A stretch of 64,000 nt of DNA, taken from the sequence record LR745208.1. One strand, written 5' to 3'. Each line of letters starts with the position of its first letter. Within the stretch, counting starts at the first letter, position 1. Under the pieces are notes generated by a model, which did no database searches, was not told the DNA's origin, and saw nothing but the letters and a program-made list of their open reading frames with translations. This document shows positions 2,436 through 18,388 of the stretch, piece after piece. Made by a program: the position numbers and the translations under genes.

Positions 2436-2779
2436 TGTACCAGATCCGGCGATTCATGGGCCACCAGGAACACCGTTGTGGGCACACCGTCTGTAACTGC
2501 AAAGGCCTGGACATCTGGGCACCCATCGTGGACCCGCGAACAAGGACCCCGGCTAACTACCACACCCACGGTGAGGCGGTACAGGACCTCCCGGATCTTC
2601 GGTTGGCCGTAGGACTCCAGGAAGGCGTGGAGCCCCGGGATCTTCGGGTGGAGAGGATCGAGTTGGGGCAGGCAGACCCAGACACCCGCCCTGTCAAAGA
2701 ACGTTCGACAAGGACGATTTCTTCCACGGAGGGGCTCAGAGGGGGTAAGGTAGGGGGGAGTCCACTTGACATCCTATAA
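2435..2779 (+). CDS. hypothetical protein
   Basis: TAATG overlap with the upstream gene. Confidence 0.5.
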   Translation: MYQIRRFMGHQEHRCGHTVCNCKGLDIWAPIVDPRTRTPANYHTHGEAVQDLPDLRLAVGLQEGVEPRDLRVERIELGQADPDTRPVKERSTRTISSTEGLRGGKVGGSPLDIL

Positions 2780-2793
2780 CCTGTCACTATACT
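2766..2793 (+). promoter_or_regulatory. sigma70-type promoter of the tRNA-Pro/Ala unit
   Basis: TTGACA-N16-TATACT. Confidence 0.75.
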
Positions 2794-2802
2794 GAACGGA
2801 CC

Positions 2803-2898
2803 ATGAACCTCTCGACCCACAGCACCAACACAGCACCAGCGGCGACAGCCGCTTGCGTGGTGGCGTGCGTGGGTCCAGCCGCCCCGCCCGCAGCCTAA
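2803..2898 (+). CDS. putative Ala/Pro-rich leader peptide MNLSTHSTNTAPAATAACVVACVGPAAPPAA
   Basis: ATG 10 nt after the -10 box. 10 Ala and 4 Pro of 31 codons; directly upstream of tRNA-Pro and tRNA-Ala. Confidence 0.6.
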   Translation: MNLSTHSTNTAPAATAACVVACVGPAAPPAA

Positions 2899-2948: not shown

Positions 2949-3023
2949 CGGGGAGTAGCTCAGTCTGGTTAGAGTATCCGGCTTGGAACCGGAGGGTCGC
3001 TGGTTCGAATCCAGTCTCCCCGA
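2949..3023 (+). tRNA. tRNA-Pro(UGG)
   Basis: Acceptor CGGGGAG/CTCCCCG, anticodon loop CT-TGG-AA, T loop TTCGAAT; CCA not encoded. Confidence 0.97.
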
Positions 3024-3046
3024 CTGTTTCGTTTCTCGTTTCGTTT

Positions 3047-3119
3047 GGGGCCATAACTCAATTGGCAGAGTGCTAGCCTTGCAAGCTGGAAGTTGCGAAT
3101 TCGAATTTCGCTGGCTCCA
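3047..3119 (+). tRNA. tRNA-Ala(UGC)
   Basis: Acceptor GGGGCCA/TGGCTCC with the G3:U70 Ala identity pair; loop CT-TGC-AA. Confidence 0.95.
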
Positions 3120-3149
3120 CCCTCAAATGATCCAGAATCCATAGGTACC

Positions 3150-3536: not shown

Positions 3537-3848
3537 ATGAACTCAACCCAACCCACAACACCCTGCCCCCTCTGTGACCGAGTGGGTCCTCAACTGGTCC
3601 TGGAGAGGCACCACCTCAAGACACGTCGTGAGGACAAGGACCTGATTGAGCTGATATGTAAGGAGTGCCACAAACAAATTCATGCCCTGTTCCCCCAGCG
3701 GGACCTGAGGAACGAAGCTCTCAACCTAGATAGCGTTGAGGGACTCCTGGCCAATGAGAAGTTCTTGGCTGCCAGGAAGTTCATCCAGAAGGTCAAACCC
3801 GGCGAGACAATCAGGTCCCGAGAATCCAAACGGAGGCGGGGCTGGTGA
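3537..3848 (+). CDS. small HNH endonuclease-like protein
   Basis: CPLC...ERHH...ICKECHKQIH pattern. Confidence 0.75.
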   Translation: MNSTQPTTPCPLCDRVGPQLVLERHHLKTRREDKDLIELICKECHKQIHALFPQRDLRNEALNLDSVEGLLANEKFLAARKFIQKVKPGETIRSRESKRRRGW

Positions 3849-5007: not shown

Positions 5008-5040
5008 ATGAACCAGCATCTGCATCACCACTGTTATTGA
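5008..5040 (+). CDS. putative His/Cys/Tyr leader peptide MNQHLHHHCY
   Basis: ATG AAC CAG CAT CTG CAT CAC CAC TGT TAT TGA, immediately upstream of tRNA-Tyr, tRNA-Cys and tRNA-His. Confidence 0.6.
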   Translation: MNQHLHHHCY

Positions 5041-5073
5041 TCGCGTCGGCTGACGGCCGAGTTTCGCGATATA
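5035..5073 (+). promoter_or_regulatory. leader hairpin overlapping the leader stop codon
   Basis: ATCGCG-TCGGC-(TGACG)-GCCGA-GTTT-CGCGAT. The Tyr codon TAT can pair with ATA at 5071-5073. Confidence 0.6.
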
Positions 5074-5074
5074 C

Positions 5075-5159
5075 GGAGTGTTGCACCTGAGTGGAAAGGG
5101 TCCCGGCTGTAAACCGGGAGGCACTGCCAGCCCGGCTTCGATTTCCGGACACTCCACCA
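5075..5159 (+). tRNA. tRNA-Tyr(GUA)
   Basis: Acceptor GGAGTGT/ACACTCC, A73, encoded CCA, loop CT-GTA-AA, long variable arm. Confidence 0.9.
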
Positions 5160-5161
5160 AT

Positions 5162-5235
5162 GAATCCTTGCCCGAACGGCCAGGGAGGAGCCTGCAAAGC
5201 TCTCTAAGTGGATTCGACTTCCACAGGATTCTCCA
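5162..5235 (+). tRNA. tRNA-Cys(GCA)
   Basis: Acceptor GAATCCT/AGGATTC, U73 Cys discriminator, encoded CCA, loop CT-GCA-AA. Confidence 0.9.
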
Positions 5236-5255: not shown

Positions 5256-5303
5256 ATGAAGACCACGAACCCCCATCGACCCCATAGGACCTGCCGCCGG
5301 TAA
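5256..5303 (+). CDS. possible second leader peptide MKTTNPHRPHRTCRR
   Basis: 15 codons with 2 His and 4 different Arg codons; its end lies in hairpin CCGCCGG/CCGGCGG (5294-5317); upstream of tRNA-His. Confidence 0.4.
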   Translation: MKTTNPHRPHRTCRR

Positions 5304-5338: not shown

Positions 5339-5412
5339 GTGGCTGTGGGGTAGTGGTTGCCCGCTGGGCTGTGAACCCGGAAGTGCTGGATCGTAACCAG
5401 CCAGTCACTCCA
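5339..5412 (+). tRNA. tRNA-His(GUG), atypical
   Basis: Acceptor GTGGCTG/CAGTCAC, loop CT-GTG-AA, encoded CCA. T loop is ATCGTAA, and U-1/U73 replace G-1/C73. Confidence 0.8.
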
Positions 5413-8675: not shown

Positions 8676-9286
8676 TGAAAACCAAGGAACTGGTTCGTCA
8701 ACTTCAGGAACAGGACCCCTCGGGGGAGGAAGAGTGCTGTTGTGGGAACCAAGACATCTTTTTTGTTTCCAAGGACCCAGCTTACTACGACGGCTCCCTT
8801 CAAGTTCTGATTCGGGACCCGGCCAAAGCCCCCTACTACGATGTTGTGGGTGGCAAATATGTGCGAACCGGGTTCAAGATCCAAATCCACACCCTGGGGA
8901 TATCGGACATCCTCGATGATCCCAAGGCAGTCATCGACTACACCGAAGTGGGCCCCGACCTACAGGGGGCATATGCGACTGCGGATGAGACCTCCCGTGA
9001 GGCATACCGGAAAATGCACTGTGACATTGAGAGAGACCTGTTTGTCAGATGGGCACGTGGAGTGGCGGACAAACTGGCAGGGGACATCAGCGAAGTTAAT
9101 GGGTGTGCCCGCAACTTCTTCGACGCCAACCTGTCCCCAATTGACCCCTTCCCGGTGGATCTTGGGGCCATGCTACCCGATGGGACCTACAGGAGTTACA
9201 ATGACCGGCGGTGTGCCCAGTGGTCCCGAGAGATTGAACTGACCTTCGATGGGATGGGTTGGGACTTCAAAAAGAAGGTGCTTTGA
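8675..9286 (+). CDS. hypothetical protein
   Basis: 203 aa, TGATG coupling. Confidence 0.7.
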   Translation: MKTKELVRQLQEQDPSGEEECCCGNQDIFFVSKDPAYYDGSLQVLIRDPAKAPYYDVVGGKYVRTGFKIQIHTLGISDILDDPKAVIDYTEVGPDLQGAYATADETSREAYRKMHCDIERDLFVRWARGVADKLAGDISEVNGCARNFFDANLSPIDPFPVDLGAMLPDGTYRSYNDRRCAQWSREIELTFDGMGWDFKKKVL

Positions 9287-9687
9287 TGCTCCCTACAAGT
9301 GCTTGTGTGGTCCTCATCCGTTACGGGAAGATCGCAGCAATCCGGTCCAGGAAGCACAACGGGGCCATTGAGCTGCCAGGGGGAAAATCAGAGCCCGGAG
9401 AGAAGCCGGAGGAGACCGCAATCCGGGAGTGCATCGAGGAGGTGGGAGTGCACCCCTACTTGGTTCGGTGCCTGCACGTTGAGGAGGATGATGGACATGG
9501 ATACCAGTGCTACGTGTACTTGGCCCGCATCCACGAGGGGGATCTGGAGTCCGGTCCTGAGGGGGAGGCTGTCTGGGTCACCCCTGAGGAACTCTTGACT
9601 GGAACCTATGCCCGTATCTCAGCGAAGTGGCTATCTACGATCAAGGATGAGTTGGGCCAATGGCAGGATCCTCAAGTGGGGGATTGA
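9286..9687 (+). CDS. Nudix hydrolase
   Basis: Nudix box LPGGKSEPGEKPEETAIRECIEEVG. Confidence 0.9.
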   Translation: MLPTSACVVLIRYGKIAAIRSRKHNGAIELPGGKSEPGEKPEETAIRECIEEVGVHPYLVRCLHVEEDDGHGYQCYVYLARIHEGDLESGPEGEAVWVTPEELLTGTYARISAKWLSTIKDELGQWQDPQVGD

Positions 9688-11382: not shown

Positions 11383-12000
11383 ATGAAACAATATCCGTCG
11401 ATCTCCAAGGACCACATCCATGGAGTCCCCTTCTACGTCTTCGACAAACTTGATGGCAGCAATTTGCGTGCAGATTTTTCGGCCAAGAAAGGATTCTGGA
11501 AATTCGGCACCCGGACCCGTCTCACGGATCTATCGGATCCTATTGGGAAACTTGCCCTTCCACTGATTCAGGCCCAAGAGGCAGCTTTTGCAGCCCTCTT
11601 CCAATCCCTCCGAGAACGAGAAGCCACCTGTTTCTTCGAGTTCTGGGGCCCCTCTTCGTTTGCCGGAGTCCACGACTACCAGGAAGCGGGGCACCGGGTA
11701 GACCTAATTGACGTGTCGATCCATCGAAGAGGCTTCATGGGGCCCAAGGAATTTGTGAAGACTTTCGAGGGGCATGTTCCAACAGCTCCGCTGCTCTACA
11801 TGGGGAATGTCACCGAGGACCTCACCCAAGCGGTCTGGGACGGAACCCTACCTGGAATGACATTCGAGGGAGTTGTCTGTAAGGGGGCCCCCCTCAAAAA
11901 GGGCTATCCTCCTCACATGTTCAAGCTCAAGAGCCAAGCCTGGATAGCTCGGGTGAAGTCCCTCTACACGGATCCGGCCGTCTTGGCAGAACTCCTGTAG
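11383..12000 (+). CDS. RNA ligase-family (Rnl2-like) nucleotidyltransferase
   Basis: Motif I KLDGSN, FFEFWG, LIDV, EGVVCK and FKLKS. Confidence 0.75.
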   Translation: MKQYPSISKDHIHGVPFYVFDKLDGSNLRADFSAKKGFWKFGTRTRLTDLSDPIGKLALPLIQAQEAAFAALFQSLREREATCFFEFWGPSSFAGVHDYQEAGHRVDLIDVSIHRRGFMGPKEFVKTFEGHVPTAPLLYMGNVTEDLTQAVWDGTLPGMTFEGVVCKGAPLKKGYPPHMFKLKSQAWIARVKSLYTDPAVLAELL

Positions 12001-13977: not shown

Positions 13978-14342
13978 GGGAACTCAAAAACAAGCTGCCC
14001 GAGAATGTGAAGCGGGACATCCCTATCGATTTGGTGGGGGTCCGAGAGTCCCGAAAGTTCTCTTCAGGCAAGGTACAAGGGCCCGATGATCCGGCCCGTC
14101 ACTGGCTTCGCTCATTGAATGAGATTACTCGTCCTTGGGAGATCAAGGACCAGTCCCTAATCGAACAGGAGCGGGCCTTCGCAAGGCACCAGTTCAACCT
14201 TGGCCTCCGAGATGTGGTGCTCGAAACAGCCGTGGCCATGGAGCAGGCCCGACGCCGGGGAACAGACTCCCAGAAGACGTACACCCGGGGAGCCTTTGAG
14301 AAGGCCCTGGCTGACTTCATGGTGGCCCTGGAGATCGAATAG
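13974..14342 (+). CDS. hypothetical protein
   Basis: 122 aa, ATGA coupling. Confidence 0.6.
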   Translation: MRELKNKLPENVKRDIPIDLVGVRESRKFSSGKVQGPDDPARHWLRSLNEITRPWEIKDQSLIEQERAFARHQFNLGLRDVVLETAVAMEQARRRGTDSQKTYTRGAFEKALADFMVALEIE

Positions 14343-14354
14343 TACAGCCACCCC

Positions 14355-14383
14355 TTGACACCTCGGTAATTCGTCTTTAGACT
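14355..14383 (+). promoter_or_regulatory. sigma70-type promoter of the Leu tRNA array
   Basis: TTGACA-N17-TAGACT. Confidence 0.8.
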
Positions 14384-14395
14384 ACACAGGACACC

Positions 14396-14485
14396 ATGTT
14401 CGATCGTGCAACCAACTCCATTCCGAGCCTGAAGCTAGAGCTATTGCTTAGCTGTGCCGGGGTGGATTTATGCACTCGTGCGTAG
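14396..14485 (+). CDS. putative Leu leader peptide MFDRATNSIPSLKLELLLSCAGVDLCTRA
   Basis: AGGA upstream. Leu codons CTG, CTA, CTA, TTG, CTT and TTA; precedes five Leu tRNAs. Confidence 0.65.
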   Translation: MFDRATNSIPSLKLELLLSCAGVDLCTRA

Positions 14486-14517
14486 GTCTGAGGTCCCCGG
14501 CAGCAAGTAGGTAGCTT
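14432..14517 (+). promoter_or_regulatory. long imperfect leader hairpin
   Basis: AAGCTA/TAGCTT, TTGCT/AGCAA, GCCGGGG/CCCCGGC and an 11-bp apical stem (14464-14474 with 14479-14489, including G-U pairs). It ends 1 nt before the first tRNA. Confidence 0.7.
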
Positions 14518-14605
14518 GGCCGGGTGATGGAATTTTGGAAGACATGCTGGTCTCAGAAGCCAGTGGGAGTAACTTCCCGTGAGGGTTCGATGCCCTTCCC
14601 GGCCA
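14518..14605 (+). tRNA. tRNA-Leu(CAG)
   Basis: Acceptor GGCCGGG/CCCGGCC, loop CT-CAG-AA, long variable arm, A73. Confidence 0.93.
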
Positions 14606-14609
14606 CTCT

Positions 14610-14691
14610 GCATGAGTGGTGTAACTGGTAGCCACGTAGGAATGAGAGTCCTATGTCGAAAGACGTGCAGGTTCGATCCCTGTCTCATGCA
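14610..14691 (+). tRNA. tRNA-Leu(GAG)
   Basis: Acceptor GCATGAG/CTCATGC, loop AT-GAG-AG, variable arm GTC-GAAA-GAC. Confidence 0.88.
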
Positions 14692-14710
14692 CTGTTTCTT
14701 TAATGTTTTC

Positions 14711-14795
14711 GCGAGGATGGCGGAATTGGCAGACGCGCCGGACTTAGGATCCGGTACCGCAAGGTGTAGGGGTTCAAGTCCCCTTTCTCGCACCA
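14711..14795 (+). tRNA. tRNA-Leu(UAG)
   Basis: Canonical fold, loop CT-TAG-GA, encoded CCA. Confidence 0.97.
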
Positions 14796-14837
14796 ACAGC
14801 TGGAAGTAGGTGAAGACTAAAACAACAATGATTTCCT

Positions 14838-14919
14838 GGGTTATTGGTGAAATTGGCAGCCACGCACCATTCAAAATGGTGTCCCGCAAGGGGTATCGGT
14901 TCAAGTCCGTTATAACCCA
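14838..14919 (+). tRNA. tRNA-Leu(CAA)
   Basis: Acceptor GGGTTAT/ATAACCC, loop TT-CAA-AA. Confidence 0.92.
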
Positions 14920-14923
14920 CTAC

Positions 14924-15006
14924 GGCCCTGTGATGGAATTGGCAGACATTCTCCCACTTAAAACGGGAGGCCGCGAGGCATCCGGGTTCAAGTCCCGGTA
15001 GGGCCA
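14924..15006 (+). tRNA. tRNA-Leu(UAA)
   Basis: Acceptor GGCCCTG/TAGGGCC. Anticodon arm CTCCC-A-CTTAAAA-C-GGGAG carries an extra A/C pair. Confidence 0.85.
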
Positions 15007-15635
15007 CCTATATTTTTTCCACAGTACGTGGGAGTCTGTGAGTGGCAGTTGGGGCACAGTAACCTCAGGTTTTCCAGGCGATGGTCCGTGGGGACCCCAT
15101 TCTTGTGGTCTAGGTGCAAGGAAATTGGCTTCCCCTTCCATGTGGTCAAAAGGCAGTCCGGGTCAGAGCATTCATATCTTAGTACTCCCTCTTTGACAAG
15201 ACGTTTACTAAGGTGGTTGGTCCCATAGGTGCTATTCTCAACCAATAACTCTGACAATGGCATCTTAACTGACCACGAGTGGGTTTTCCCCTTCAAGTGT
15301 CCCTGTCCTGTCCAGTGCGTGGTACTCAAACCCAACCGGAGAATATGTTGCCGAATGGTCTTGTAGTTCCCCCCAACAGGGGACAACCCCAATTCCCTTA
15401 AGACCATGGCCATGGTAAATTGGGTAGCCACGGCCCGTGTGAGTTGTTCCTCTGACCATTTCTTGAAGTGTACCGCCCAATGCTCGGACTTTAACCCTAA
15501 GCGCCCCATATGCGTTTGGATAGTCTTCGCATTACTGCTATTGGGGTAAAGCCCCAATTCCCTCAGCACCTCTGACATGGAAAACTTCGTGGTTACGGCC
15601 TGAATTAGCTGAGTGTCGGTCCATGTTCTTGACAT
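14988..15635 (-). CDS. HNH (homing-type) endonuclease
   Basis: Two N-terminal W..EQL..AV...LRELGL repeats and C-terminal LDHKNG...NLRLLCPNCH. Confidence 0.9.
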   Translation of the reverse strand: MSRTWTDTQLIQAVTTKFSMSEVLRELGLYPNSSNAKTIQTHMGRLGLKSEHWAVHFKKWSEEQLTRAVATQFTMAMVLRELGLSPVGGNYKTIRQHILRLGLSTTHWTGQGHLKGKTHSWSVKMPLSELLVENSTYGTNHLSKRLVKEGVLRYECSDPDCLLTTWKGKPISLHLDHKNGVPTDHRLENLRLLCPNCHSQTPTYCGKNIGGPTGT

Positions 15636-17654: not shown

Positions 17655-18388
17655 AGGGCATCCCTCAGGTAGCGTTGGACCTTCATTCTATCCAACTGGT
17701 CATTGGTTCTCAAGCACCCCTCCGCATCAATGTTGACCTCGGGGAACCGGGCGCGGATGGGATGGATCAGGTGAAGAGTTTCCTGGCAGAGACCGCCAGC
17801 CACACCCAGCCCAATGTTCGGGGACCGTTCTGCAATGGCCTCTAGGTACCTCAAACACAGGTCGGTATCTAGAGGAACCCCTTTCCCACCACTGCCATCA
17901 ACCAGTACATCCGTAATGGCATCCCCGTAGTCGGCCACCCGCTTGGCGGTCTCTGTATAGCCCCCACCTACCCTCATGGCCCGCGGTCCAATTTGTAGGA
18001 CTATTCGGTCCCCCAGACGAGATCCATCTTTGATCGCCTTGGCATTCGGCCAAACCATATTGAGTTGGAACCCGTGAACAAATCCACGCCATCCCAGGAT
18101 GTCCCGAATCTGACGCATGGAAGATGTCAGCTGTCCCTGACCCTCATCCCCAGTTGAAAAATGAATGAGCCTGAGTTCCCGAGGGTCTGCGTCCAGCGGG
18201 GCAATGAGTGGCAGCTCCCCAATGATAGGGAACCGGTTTGGGTACTTGTTTGTCTCTCCCCTGAGAGTCTTGGAGCTAGCTAGCAATCCTACCATGAGTA
18301 GGTGACTTGATTCCTGGGGCATATTGTCAAGAGCTTCCAGGACTTGTTCCCGGGACATAAATGCGGTGACTCCTACGTATGGTTTCAT
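17651..18388 (-). CDS. phosphoribosylanthranilate isomerase (TrpF)-like TIM barrel
   Basis: VLVDGSGGKG, GVAGGL and NIDAEG motifs. Confidence 0.55.
   Translation of the reverse strand: MKPYVGVTAFMSREQVLEALDNMPQESSHLLMVGLLASSKTLRGETNKYPNRFPIIGELPLIAPLDADPRELRLIHFSTGDEGQGQLTSSMRQIRDILGWRGFVHGFQLNMVWPNAKAIKDGSRLGDRIVLQIGPRAMRVGGGYTETAKRVADYGDAITDVLVDGSGGKGVPLDTDLCLRYLEAIAERSPNIGLGVAGGLCQETLHLIHPIRARFPEVNIDAEGCLRTNDQLDRMKVQRYLRDAL

What the first reader, a model, noticed from the sequence alone, without database searches (positions are those of the whole stretch)
14355..15006. Complete five-anticodon Leu tRNA array behind a leader that samples every Leu anticodon
Seen: tRNA-Leu CAG, GAG, UAG, CAA and UAA in tandem with no other tRNA type, behind TTGACA-N17-TAGACT. 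The 29-codon leader has CTG, CTA, CTA, TTG and CTT within seven codons (LKLELLL) and a TTA later, so each anticodon has a cognate codon. Established: leu-operon attenuators use Leu codon runs, normally with repeated codons. Inference: the diversity of synonymous codons suggests sensing of individual isoacceptors (tRNA loss) rather than leucine starvation alone.
Basis: partly seen in the sequence, partly recalled or inferred. Interest (0 to 1): 0.88.

Follow-up and report, generated by a model that had tools for sequence, protein, structure and literature searches.

The report
Leader peptides that gauge phage tRNA supply
A 485-kb uncultured groundwater phage puts a tiny translated "test strip" of matching codons plus a hairpin in front of nearly every one of its tRNA gene clusters (the five-gene leucine array is one case), which looks like amino-acid-operon attenuation re-used to control tRNA genes themselves, something I could not find described before.

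Summary
In detail: five tRNA-Leu genes (CAG, GAG, UAG, CAA, UAA) sit at 14518-15008. Upstream are TTGACA-N17-TAGACT and a 29-codon ORF carrying CTG, CTA, CTA, TTG, CTT and TTA.

Alone, this leader is weak evidence (6 Leu in 28 codons, P=0.03). It is not alone. The window is part of huge phage LR745208.1. About 16 of its tRNA units have the same layout: a short ATG-ORF rich in the amino acids of the tRNAs that follow, then a stable hairpin abutting the tRNA. Examples are MNQHLHHHCY before Tyr-Cys-His, MRFFTTTRTRT before Thr x3, ...QQPQQQQQ before Gln x2 and a Pro/Ala-rich ORF before Pro-Ala.

- Shuffling tRNA sets among leaders never reached the observed match (0/200,000).
- The enrichment is specific to the ATG frame.
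- Six unrelated phages with a similar promoter-ORF-tRNA layout lack it.
- Two operons form one ORF running through tRNA genes; the single relative found preserves this.

The hairpins are not canonical U-tract terminators, and the mechanism is inferred.

Sensing of each isoacceptor is plausible but only modestly supported (P about 0.02 for Leu). I judge this a new variant of ribosome-mediated attenuation, controlling tRNA genes.

The parts
14355..14383 (+). Sigma-70-type promoter: TTGACA (14355-14360), 17-nt spacer, TAGACT (14378-14383). It ends 12 nt before the leader ATG, so the 5' UTR would be only about 5-7 nt.
   Evidence: 10 of 12 consensus positions; only 6 perfect TTGACA-N16-18-TAnAnT sites in the whole 485-kb genome on both strands, 4 of them at tRNA leaders.
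14396..14485 (+). Leu leader ORF, 29 codons plus TAG: MFDRATNSIPSLKLELLLSCAGVDLCTRA. The start context caccATG fits the genome-wide preference for C at -1 and -2.
14429..14449 (+). Regulatory codon run CTG AAG CTA GAG CTA TTG CTT. A sixth Leu codon, TTA, lies at 14468-14470. From 14438 onward the run lies in the 5' arm of the hairpin.
14438..14517 (+). Long imperfect hairpin. The outer stem is GCTAGAGCTATTGCTTAGCTG / CAGCAAGTAGGTAGCTT and the inner stem is GCCGGGG / CCCCGGC. It contains the leader stop codon (14483-14485) and ends at the base before tRNA-Leu(CAG). Only TT follows, so there is no U-tract.
   Evidence: MFE -40.9 kcal/mol against -28.5 +/- 2.9 for dinucleotide shuffles, z=-4.2, 0 of 300 shuffles as stable; not flagged as a terminator.
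14518..14606 (+). tRNA-Leu (anticodon CAG)
14610..14692 (+). tRNA-Leu (anticodon GAG)
14711..14795 (+). tRNA-Leu (anticodon UAG)
14838..14920 (+). tRNA-Leu (anticodon CAA)
14924..15008 (+). tRNA-Leu (anticodon UAA)
15009..15020 (+). TATATTTTTTCC directly after the last tRNA (T6 at 15013-15018). Likely the end of the transcription unit.
   Evidence: read from the sequence; function inferred.
2766..2898 (+). Paralogous unit in the window: TTGACA-N16-TATACT (2766-2793) followed by leader ORF 2803-2898, MNLSTHSTNTAPAATAACVVACVGPAAPPAA (14 Pro/Ala in 30 codons). It lies ahead of tRNA-Pro(UGG) 2949-3024 and tRNA-Ala(UGC) 3046-3122.
   Evidence: P=2.8e-5.
5008..5040 (+). Paralogous unit: leader ORF MNQHLHHHCY ahead of tRNA-Tyr 5075-5159, tRNA-Cys 5162-5235 and tRNA-His 5339-5412. 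A hairpin at 5040-5070 follows the stop.
   Evidence: P=4.3e-6.
5256..5303 (+). Internal leader ORF MKTTNPHRPHRTCRR (two His codons), with a hairpin CCGCCGG...CCGGCGG carrying the stop in its loop. It lies between tRNA-Cys and tRNA-His.

Best explanation
The Leu leader is one member of a genome-wide set of ribosome-read sensors. Together they couple the output of this phage's own tRNA genes to how well the matching codons are being decoded.

Proposed sequence of events:
1. A host-type sigma-70 promoter starts a transcript with a very short 5' UTR.
2. A ribosome translates a short ORF whose distal part is a run of codons cognate to the tRNAs encoded just downstream. For the Leu array these are CTG, CTA, CTA, TTG and CTT, then TTA.
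3. These codons lie in, or within about 12 nt upstream of, the 5' arm of a stable hairpin. The hairpin contains the stop codon and its 3' arm ends at the tRNA's 5' end.
4. If the matching charged tRNAs are scarce, the ribosome stalls on the run and physically prevents the hairpin from forming. The polymerase or the processing machinery can then go on to make the tRNAs. Scarcity could arise from host tRNA loss or cleavage, a codon-usage mismatch, or simply because the phage tRNAs have not yet accumulated.
5. If decoding is fast, the ribosome finishes and leaves, the hairpin forms, and tRNA production is curtailed. The result is negative feedback on tRNA supply.

What is shown: the promoter, the ORFs, the cognate-codon enrichment and its frame specificity, the hairpins and their position, and conservation of ORF and frame in one relative.

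What is inferred: that the ORFs are translated, that stalling occurs, the direction of the effect, and that the hairpin acts by termination or pausing rather than by blocking processing.
For: 1. About sixteen ATG-leaders precede tRNA units across LR745208.1. Examples are MYALLKPGTLNRNANA before Asn; MNSYTTSERERESDSERT before Glu-Asp-Glu...HGRDGGTLARGCGRVQRRRRIR... before Arg x3 and Gly x2; MRFFTTTRTRTAGLTRKG before Thr x3...LQPRQQPQQQQQ before Gln x2; and the Pro/Ala, His/Cys/Tyr and Leu leaders.
2. Permuting tRNA sets among leaders gave 0 of 200,000 permutations reaching the observed cognate fraction, z=6.6. The Fisher-combined binomial P against genome amino-acid usage is about 1e-14.
3. Frame specificity: 77 cognate residues in 386 codons in the ATG frame, against 27-34 in each of the other five frames.
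4. One prediction and one after-the-fact agreement. An Asn-rich leader pointed to a tRNA-Asn(GUU) that ARAGORN had missed and Rfam then confirmed at 48.6 bits. The leader ending ...AGA CGA ATA... precedes tRNA-Arg(UCU) and an intron-containing tRNA-Ile(UAU); I noticed that second match after finding the tRNA.
5. The spacers between codon run and tRNA are more structured than dinucleotide shuffles: Stouffer z=-8.9 over 16 units, Leu z=-4.2. The cognate codons sit in or next to the 5' arm.
6. The consensus sigma-70 promoter is almost exclusive to these units.
7. Leader start contexts match the genome's general start context.
8. The one relative found, L018, has about 80% nucleotide identity in protein genes and only 55-71% in the tRNAs. 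It keeps the Phe and Gln leaders. The codon run and hairpin part of the Gln leader (132 nt) is 98% identical, while the N-terminal codons change non-synonymously without indels or stops.
9. Negative control: six unrelated phages that have a promoter, ACCATGA and a small ORF ahead of tRNAs show no cognate enrichment.
Against: - No canonical intrinsic terminator follows any leader. There are only 2-4 T's, and none is flagged. No alternative antiterminator fold is evident. Termination is therefore not demonstrated.
- The Leu leader on its own is only marginally enriched (P=0.033).
- Several units are weak, with one cognate codon in the Gly2, Phe and 'tttA' leaders.
- The Ser-rich frame has no ATG, and tRNA-Met and the two outlying tRNAs in L001 have no leader.
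- There is no Shine-Dalgarno sequence, and no expression data exist for an uncultivated phage.
- In chained operons (Ile-Phe-Gln, Lys-Val-Arg), simple trp-type logic would make distal tRNAs depend on upstream stalls. This fits poorly.
- No diverged relative of the Leu locus was found, so neither covariation in the hairpin nor conservation of the Leu codons could be tested.
Confidence: 0.6

Rival explanations
1. The sensor is the same but the output differs. The hairpin does not stop the polymerase. Instead it makes the 5' leader next to the tRNA double-stranded, so RNase P, or an endonuclease that starts maturation, cannot act. A ribosome stalled on the cognate codons frees the 3' arm and permits 5' maturation. 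Control is post-transcriptional and separate for each tRNA unit.
For: - The 3' arm of the hairpin ends 0-6 nt from the tRNA 5' end in all units.
- There are no U-tracts.
- In chained operons each amino-acid type has its own leader directly upstream of its tRNA. Independent post-transcriptional control explains this better than serial terminators do.
Against: - Only the first tRNA of an array would be controlled directly, yet leaders of arrays (Leu x5, Arg x3, Thr x3) carry codons for all members.
- ORFs that run through tRNAs suggest sensing happens co-transcriptionally, before processing.
- No direct evidence exists either way.
Confidence: 0.2
2. The logic is a coupling-type attenuator like pyrBI, with the opposite sign. 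A ribosome that keeps up with the polymerase melts the hairpins, so efficient translation gives read-through and more tRNA. A ribosome that lags lets the hairpin form and transcription stops. The leaders would then act as feed-forward checks that the cell can decode phage codons, not as homeostats.
For: - There is a single hairpin with no antiterminator.
- Two operons are single ORFs running across hairpins and tRNA genes (137 and 139 codons), as if one lead ribosome were meant to follow the polymerase along the whole operon.
- The frame is kept in the relative L018 by compensating indels.
Against: - The cognate codons overlap the 5' arm, so a ribosome stalled on them would also block the hairpin.
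- Shutting off a tRNA gene when that tRNA is scarce gives no obvious benefit.
- Most leaders stop before the tRNA.
Confidence: 0.1
3. There is no sensing. The small ORFs are incidental or encode micropeptides. The hairpins are ordinary processing or stability elements of tRNA precursors, and the Leu codon pattern is a by-product of the stem sequence.
For: - The Leu leader alone gives only P=0.033.
- Its Leu codons lie in a stem whose sequence (CTAG..CTA.. pairing with TAG..TAG) would generate CTN/TTG triplets in some frame.
- No Shine-Dalgarno sequence is present.
- Weak units exist.
Against: - The genome-wide association between leader composition and tRNA identity: 0 of 200,000 permutations, combined P about 1e-14.
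- The strict dependence on the ATG frame.
- The missed tRNA-Asn that an Asn-rich leader pointed to and Rfam then confirmed.
- The absence of the effect in control phages.
Confidence: 0.07

Closest known systems
Leader-peptide (ribosome-mediated) transcription attenuators of amino-acid operons (leuL, hisL, trpL, thrL, pheL, ilvL) and of the synthetase operon pheST (pheM). From my own knowledge; attenuation models in PMC1183508 and pheL in PMC3082878 appeared (listings seen, papers not opened).
   Same: A short ORF lies directly behind a promoter. It carries a run of codons for the amino acid relevant to the regulated genes, and an RNA hairpin overlapping or following the run could be prevented from forming by a stalled ribosome. 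The logic is sensing of charged-tRNA availability by translation speed.
   Different: - The regulated genes are tRNA genes, not biosynthetic enzymes or synthetases.
- There is no U-tract terminator and no 1:2 / 2:3 / 3:4 alternative pairing, only a single hairpin abutting the tRNA.
- Codon runs are short and use mixed synonymous codons.
- Multi-amino-acid leaders match multi-amino-acid tRNA clusters.
- Some leader ORFs continue through tRNA genes.
- The system is phage-encoded and repeated about 16 times as a regulon.
- There is no Rfam Leu_leader match.
Translation attenuation of ermC / cat type, and pyrBI-type coupling attenuation (from my own knowledge).
   Same: The design uses one hairpin, in which a ribosome sitting on leader codons physically masks one arm.
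   Different: In erm and cat the melted hairpin frees a ribosome-binding site and stalling is drug-induced. In pyrBI the signal is polymerase pausing at low UTP. Here the site next to the hairpin is a tRNA 5' end, and the presumed signal is decoding of cognate codons.
T-box riboswitches (from my own knowledge).
   Same: A leader RNA senses the state of a specific tRNA through codon-anticodon recognition and controls translation-apparatus genes.
   Different: T-boxes bind uncharged tRNA directly, without a ribosome. They use a single specifier codon in Stem I and a conserved T-box sequence. Here many cognate codons lie in an ATG-started frame and there is no T-box match.
tRNA gene arrays of large phages (T4, T5 and the huge phages of Al-Shayeb et al. 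2020, PMC7162821).
   Same: The phage carries many tRNA genes in clusters. RNA ligases that could repair cleaved tRNAs are encoded nearby. The source genome is an unannotated 'uncultured phage' record of 485 kb; I assume, without having checked the accession, that it belongs to the huge-phage set of that paper.
   Different: That paper reports tRNA numbers and synthetases but does not mention leaders or attenuation (the words 'leader' and 'attenuat' occur 0 times). Here tRNAs are sorted by amino acid, and each group carries its own cognate-codon leader.

Membership tests
Leader-peptide transcription attenuator (leuL/hisL/trpL/pheM type) | Short ORF starting close behind a promoter, upstream of the regulated genes | tested here: met
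   Promoter 14355-14383 and ORF 14396-14485. The same layout occurs at about 16 units.
Leader-peptide transcription attenuator (leuL/hisL/trpL/pheM type) | Regulatory codons cognate to the regulated pathway are over-represented in the leader, in frame | tested here: met
   The set as a whole: 0 of 200,000 permutations, combined P about 1e-14, and 77 cognate residues in the ATG frame against 27-34 in the other frames. Leu alone gives only P=0.033.
Leader-peptide transcription attenuator (leuL/hisL/trpL/pheM type) | Intrinsic terminator (G+C-rich hairpin followed by a U-tract) between the leader and the regulated genes | tested here: not met
   A hairpin is present (z=-4.2), but only TT follows it. 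No leader hairpin in any unit is flagged as terminator-like.
Leader-peptide transcription attenuator (leuL/hisL/trpL/pheM type) | Mutually exclusive terminator and antiterminator pairings selected by ribosome position | tested here: not met
   MFE and centroid folds show one long hairpin plus a small unrelated 5' stem, with no competing antiterminator. Suboptimal folds were not explored exhaustively.
Leader-peptide transcription attenuator (leuL/hisL/trpL/pheM type) | Sequence and structure homology to the curated Leu_leader family | tested here: not met
   No Rfam hit other than tRNA at the gathering threshold. Nothing relevant at E<=10 in 14340-14530.
Leader-peptide transcription attenuator (leuL/hisL/trpL/pheM type) | Read-through responds to the supply of the cognate charged tRNA | not testable with these tools
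   This needs reporter assays or in vitro coupled transcription-translation.
T-box riboswitch | Stem I specifier loop with a single codon, plus a conserved T-box antiterminator bulge that pairs with the tRNA NCCA end | tested here: not met
   No T-box match in Rfam scans. The cognate codons are multiple and frame-dependent.
Phage tRNA gene array | Tandem, same-strand tRNA genes with short spacers in a phage genome | tested here: met
   Five tRNA-Leu genes with spacers of 3, 18, 42 and 3 nt. The genome is LR745208.1, uncultured phage, 485,034 bp. Rfam and an intron-aware ARAGORN run added two tRNAs to ARAGORN's 36.
erm/cat-type translation attenuation | A stalled ribosome in the leader ORF melts a hairpin that sequesters the ribosome-binding site of the regulated gene | tested here: not met
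   The hairpin overlaps the regulatory codons, but what it abuts is a tRNA 5' end, not a ribosome-binding site.

The most novel reading that the evidence does not exclude
A huge phage runs a demand-driven tRNA regulon. Nearly every tRNA gene group is preceded by a leader ORF that tests, codon by codon and largely isoacceptor by isoacceptor, whether those tRNAs are available. Production of the phage's own tRNAs is gated accordingly. In two operons a single ribosome reads one continuous ORF straight through tRNA genes, visiting successive sensors. This would be the first case of ribosome-mediated attenuation controlling tRNA genes. It would also be a counter-measure that switches on replacement tRNAs when the host pool is depleted or cleaved.
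Probability: 0.5. Interest if true: 0.93.

Novelty: new variant of a known kind. Interest (0 to 1): 0.88.

Why it matters
How phages regulate the tRNAs they carry is largely unknown. The genes are usually treated as constitutive codon-usage supplements or as spares against host anticodon nucleases.

A leader-peptide sensor in front of each tRNA group would mean the phage measures decoding capacity for each amino acid, and possibly for each isoacceptor, and adjusts its own tRNA supply. This would extend a textbook bacterial mechanism, attenuation, to a new class of targets, the tRNA genes themselves.

It makes two questions directly testable: whether tRNA abundance can be feedback-controlled through translation speed, and whether phage tRNAs are induced on demand.

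It also offers a compact set of about 16 natural codon-specific sensors that could serve as reporters of charged-tRNA availability.

The ORFs that run through tRNA genes would be an unusual case of one RNA stretch serving both as message and as tRNA precursor.

Tried and rejected
Relatives of the Leu locus were the main thing I tried and failed to find.
- GenBank phages by megablast, blastn and tblastn returned only the source record LR745208.1.
- IMG/VR by flanking proteins and leader 20-mers returned only the same genome, plus relatives at 30% identity without tRNAs nearby.
- The 5.8-billion-protein search with the 122-aa upstream neighbour found only itself. Its 24 contigs are the same phage at 99.9-100% identity, with no change in the leader.
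- The downstream 434-aa protein gave relatives at 54% identity or less, without tRNAs nearby.
- A two-fold-degenerate 28-mer matching both the Leu and Gln leaders, run on JGI metagenomes, returned only the same phage plus two chance hits.
- The RNA-ligase neighbour of the Gln operon gave one useful relative (L018, 83% amino-acid identity). More distant relatives lacked tRNA clusters.

Ideas considered and rejected:
- A canonical Leu_leader or T-box.
- A canonical U-tract terminator.
- The leader as a degenerate tRNA or mini-helix. The inner stem GCCGGGG/CCCCGGC resembles the acceptor stem of tRNA-Leu(CAG), but other leaders show no such resemblance, so I treat it as coincidence.
- Cognate enrichment as a general property of small ORFs upstream of phage tRNAs.
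- An assembly artefact.

Hairpin covariation could not be tested for lack of diverged sequences.
Full report
**1. The observation**

ARAGORN finds ten tRNA genes in the window. Five are tandem tRNA-Leu genes on the + strand: CAG 14518-14606, GAG 14610-14692, UAG 14711-14795, CAA 14838-14920 and UAA 14924-15008. Rfam's tRNA model confirms all five.

TTGACA-N17-TAGACT lies at 14355-14383. A 29-codon ATG ORF lies at 14396-14485 and encodes MFDRATNSIPSLKLELLLSCAGVDLCTRA. It has CTG AAG CTA GAG CTA TTG CTT at 14429-14449 and TTA at 14468-14470.

The window has no N. The same sequence occurs in several independent assemblies.

**2. Where it comes from**

The window is bases 186001-250000 of LR745208.1, an unannotated 485,034-bp "uncultured phage" genome. 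The same genome is in IMG/VR and in groundwater metagenomes.

I fetched the rest of the genome. ARAGORN finds 36 tRNAs, all on the + strand. Nearly all lie between about 141.8 and 201 kb, sorted by amino acid: Arg x3-Gly x2, Ser x2 and x2, Lys-Val-Arg, Thr x3, Ile-Phe-Gln x2, Glu-Asp-Glu, Pro-Ala, Tyr-Cys-His and Leu x5. Rfam adds a tRNA-Asn(GUU). An intron-aware ARAGORN run adds an intron-containing tRNA-Ile(UAU). Only Trp is missing.

The complete Leu set is therefore part of a near-complete tRNA complement ordered by amino acid.

**3. The key finding**

On its own the Leu leader is weak evidence: 6 Leu in 28 codons, P=0.033 against the phage's amino-acid usage. Reading upstream of the other clusters shows the same layout again and again. 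The layout is a sigma-70-type promoter (mostly TTGACA-N16/17-TATACT), 9-21 nt, an ATG often in the context ACCATGAAC, a short ORF whose distal part is rich in the amino acids of the tRNAs that follow, a hairpin, and then the tRNA.

| Leader ORF | tRNAs that follow |
|---|---|
| MNLSTHSTNTAPAATAACVVACVGPAAPPAA | Pro, Ala |
| MNQHLHHHCY | Tyr, Cys, His |
| MKTTNPHRPHRTCRR | His |
| MNSYTTSERERESDSERT | Glu, Asp, Glu |
| MSFSMYTKTTTHGRDGGTLARGCGRVQRRRRIRPTT | Arg x3, Gly x2 |
| MRFFTTTRTRTAGLTRKG | Thr x3 |
| ...TLQPRQQPQQQQQ | Gln x2 |
| MYALLKPGTLNRNANA | Asn |

Weaker leaders precede Ile, Lys, Val, Phe, Gly and Arg(UCU).

**4. Statistics**

- With 16 ATG-leaders defined by one rule (first ATG after the -10 element, or in the spacer), shuffling the tRNA sets among leaders never reached the observed cognate fraction: 0 of 200,000, z=6.6.
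- Binomial tests against genome amino-acid usage combine to P about 1e-14.
- The signal depends on the frame: 77 cognate residues in 386 codons in the ATG frame, against 27-34 in each of the other five frames. This argues for decoding by ribosomes rather than RNA-RNA recognition.
- An Asn-rich leader led me to a tRNA-Asn that ARAGORN had missed.
- The leader ending AGG CTC AGA CGA ATA TCT GTC TGA precedes tRNA-Arg(UCU) and tRNA-Ile(UAU), the decoders of the rare AGA and ATA codons. I noticed this agreement after the fact.
- Perfect TTGACA-N16-18-TAnAnT occurs six times in 970 kb of both strands, four of them at these leaders.
- As a negative control, a promoter plus ACCATGA pattern scan of IMG/VR gave six unrelated phages with a small ORF ahead of tRNAs. 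None shows cognate enrichment.

**5. Structure**

Between the codon run and the tRNA, every unit has a stable hairpin. Over 16 units the mean z against dinucleotide shuffles is -2.2 and the Stouffer z is -8.9.

The Leu hairpin spans 14438-14517. Its MFE is -40.9 kcal/mol, z=-4.2, and 0 of 300 shuffles are as stable.

Recurrent features:
- The cognate codons lie in, or within about 12 nt upstream of, the 5' arm.
- The leader stop codon lies in the loop or the 3' arm.
- The 3' arm ends 0-6 nt before the tRNA.

None of these hairpins is a canonical intrinsic terminator. Only 2-4 T's follow, and none is flagged. By contrast, T-runs or hairpin-plus-T-run features follow the ends of some operons, for example TATATTTTTT after tRNA-Leu(UAA). 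No alternative antiterminator fold is evident. Rfam finds no Leu_leader or T-box.

**6. ORFs that run through tRNA genes**

Leaders that lack a stop continue in frame through tRNA genes.
- L004 17287-17700 is one 137-codon ORF: Lys leader, tRNA-Lys, Val leader (its ATG overlaps the CCA end), tRNA-Val, Arg leader, stop.
- L004 26455-26874 is one 139-codon ORF: Ile leader, tRNA-Ile, Phe leader, tRNA-Phe, Gln leader, stop.

By base composition, an open frame of 137 codons has P about 0.013. Only 38% of frames through tRNAs are open.

**7. The one relative**

L018 is a 3.1-kb groundwater contig whose RNA ligase is 83% identical to the phage's. It carries the 3' part of tRNA-Ile, the Phe leader, tRNA-Phe, the Gln leader and tRNA-Gln x2.

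Nucleotide identity to our phage:

| Segment | Identity |
|---|---|
| tRNA genes | 55-71% |
| Protein-coding genes | about 80% |
| Phe leader | 75% |
| 3' 132 nt of the Gln leader (Gln run plus hairpin) | 98% |

The first 13 Gln-leader codons differ at four amino-acid positions, with no indel or stop. The Phe spacer has no ATG in L018, yet it keeps the frame and has two Phe codons. The single frame stays open from the contig start through tRNA-Phe to the same stop. A -1/+1 length change in spacer and tRNA cancels out.

This is the pattern expected if the reading frame and the codon-run and hairpin module are under selection, but not the peptide sequence.

**8. Mechanism**

My best-supported reading is a ribosome-read sensor of decoding capacity that gates phage tRNA production. 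A ribosome stalled on hungry cognate codons masks the 5' arm and prevents the hairpin. A ribosome that finishes quickly leaves, and the hairpin forms and limits tRNA output.

Shown: the elements, their association, the frame specificity, the geometry, and partial conservation.

Inferred: translation, stalling, the sign of the effect, and the output step.

Whether the hairpin acts on the polymerase (non-canonical termination or pausing) or on 5' maturation (RNase P access) cannot be decided here.
- Control of whole arrays, and leaders that carry codons for all array members, favour a transcriptional step.
- The hairpin abutting the tRNA, the missing U-tracts, and a separate leader for each amino acid inside chained operons favour a processing step.
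- The through-tRNA ORFs suggest a lead ribosome following the polymerase, and leave a pyrBI-like feed-forward logic open.

**9.

Each Leu anticodon has a Watson-Crick codon in the leader. With six Leu codons drawn from the phage's usage (CTA 10%, TTA 2.5%), this has P=0.019. It rises to 0.54 if U34 also reads G.

The leaders for Thr, Gln, Arg, Glu, Gly and Ser also cover all their isoacceptors. The Arg x3 leader lacks AGA, whose tRNA is elsewhere. Jointly this gives about 3e-4 with Ser, or 1.6e-3 without it, using class definitions made after seeing the data.

Counter-examples exist: AAA before Lys-CUU, GTC before Val-UAC, and GCC/GCT/CCC before single Ala and Pro tRNAs.

Isoacceptor-level sampling is therefore plausible but not established. 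Because the regulated genes are tRNAs, sensing tRNA supply rather than amino-acid supply is the natural reading. Sequence alone cannot separate the two.

**10. Comparison and novelty**

The closest known systems are these:
- leader-peptide attenuators, especially pheM-pheST as a translation-apparatus target;
- single-hairpin ribosome-masking attenuators (erm/cat, pyrBI);
- functionally, T-boxes.

Membership in the canonical attenuator family fails on the terminator, on the alternative pairing and on homology. The working principle still looks the same.

Seven full-text searches and a term search within the huge-phage paper (PMC7162821; 'leader' and 'attenuat' occur 0 times) found no description of leader-peptide control of tRNA genes. 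I rate it a new variant of a known kind, of high interest. The main caveats are that it rests on one phage lineage plus one fragment of a relative, and that no expression data exist.

Noticed in passing
L004 17287-17700 and L004 26455-26874 (genome 167287-167700 and 176455-176874); relative L018 1-326: Two tRNA operons are single ORFs of 137 and 139 codons. They run in frame through tRNA-Lys and tRNA-Val, and through tRNA-Ile and tRNA-Phe, linking successive leaders. The frame is kept in the relative L018 although its tRNA sequences are only 55-71% identical.
   Followed up: partly
L004 about 17806-18092: An intron-aware ARAGORN run calls a tRNA-Ile(UAU) with a 210-nt intron after position 38. 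It lies directly after tRNA-Arg(UCU) and is followed by CTTTTTTCA. The type of intron was not examined.
   Followed up: partly
L004 11341-11422: The spacer between tRNA-Ser(GCU) and tRNA-Ser(CGA) holds a Ser-rich frame, WWSSSLSVSRS*, with the codons AGT x3, TCA, TCG and TCC. This is one codon class for each of the four Ser tRNAs. A hairpin carries the stop in its loop. There is no in-frame ATG; the only in-frame start-like codon is a GTG inside the upstream tRNA.
   Followed up: partly
window 14988-15635 (-): An HNH-endonuclease-like ORF (weak Pfam HNH and HNH_3 hits) lies immediately after the Leu array, and its 3' end overlaps the last 21 nt of tRNA-Leu(UAA). Another endonuclease-like ORF (weak Phage_endo_I hit) splits the four Ser tRNAs at L004 11561-12280. 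An HNH-like ORF also lies at window 3537-3848, between the Pro/Ala and Tyr/Cys/His clusters.
   Followed up: partly
window 11383-12000 (+); L004 27748-28905 (+): Two RNA-ligase-family genes lie inside the tRNA region. One is a weak PF09414 hit and the other a clear PF09414 plus PHA02142 OB-fold hit. This is compatible with repair of tRNAs cleaved by host nucleases.
   Followed up: partly
L004 3886-4695 (+): A 269-aa protein with a Sigma-70 region 4 domain is encoded directly after the Arg/Gly tRNA cluster. It may be relevant to who reads the consensus promoters of the tRNA units.
   Followed up: no
L001 7629-7705; L003 42332-42406; L001 5878-5952: Three odd tRNAs. One is a possible ochre-suppressor tRNA (anticodon UUA, borderline Rfam score of 29.5 bits). 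One has an 8-nt anticodon loop, called 'ttta' by ARAGORN and perhaps Lys-UUU. One is a second tRNA-Arg(CCU) far from the main tRNA region. The suppressor-like tRNA and the second Arg(CCU) lack cognate leaders.
   Followed up: no
L003 41639-41807: tRNA-Met has a weaker promoter (TCGACA-N16-TAAGAT) and no cognate leader. Its spacer carries a hairpin, CAACGATG...CATCGTTG, containing an ATG whose frame runs into the tRNA.
   Followed up: no
L004 26770-26901 compared with L018 223-353: The 3' 132 nt of the Gln leader is 98% identical between two phages whose flanking genes are about 80% identical and whose tRNAs are 55-71% identical. Its upstream half (GGGGTTGGGTGCAGGGCACCGTGCGAACTCC...) may be a further structured element or a decayed tRNA.
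   Followed up: partly
whole genome LR745208.1: There are 38 tRNAs for 19 amino acids, and none for Trp was found. Start contexts prefer C at -1 and -2, with little Shine-Dalgarno signal. Terminator-like sites are not more frequent than in shuffled sequence. A NUDIX-like ORF (assigned by motif only, window 9259-9687) and an NAD synthase gene (Pfam hit, L004 19071-19943) lie among the tRNA clusters.
   Followed up: no
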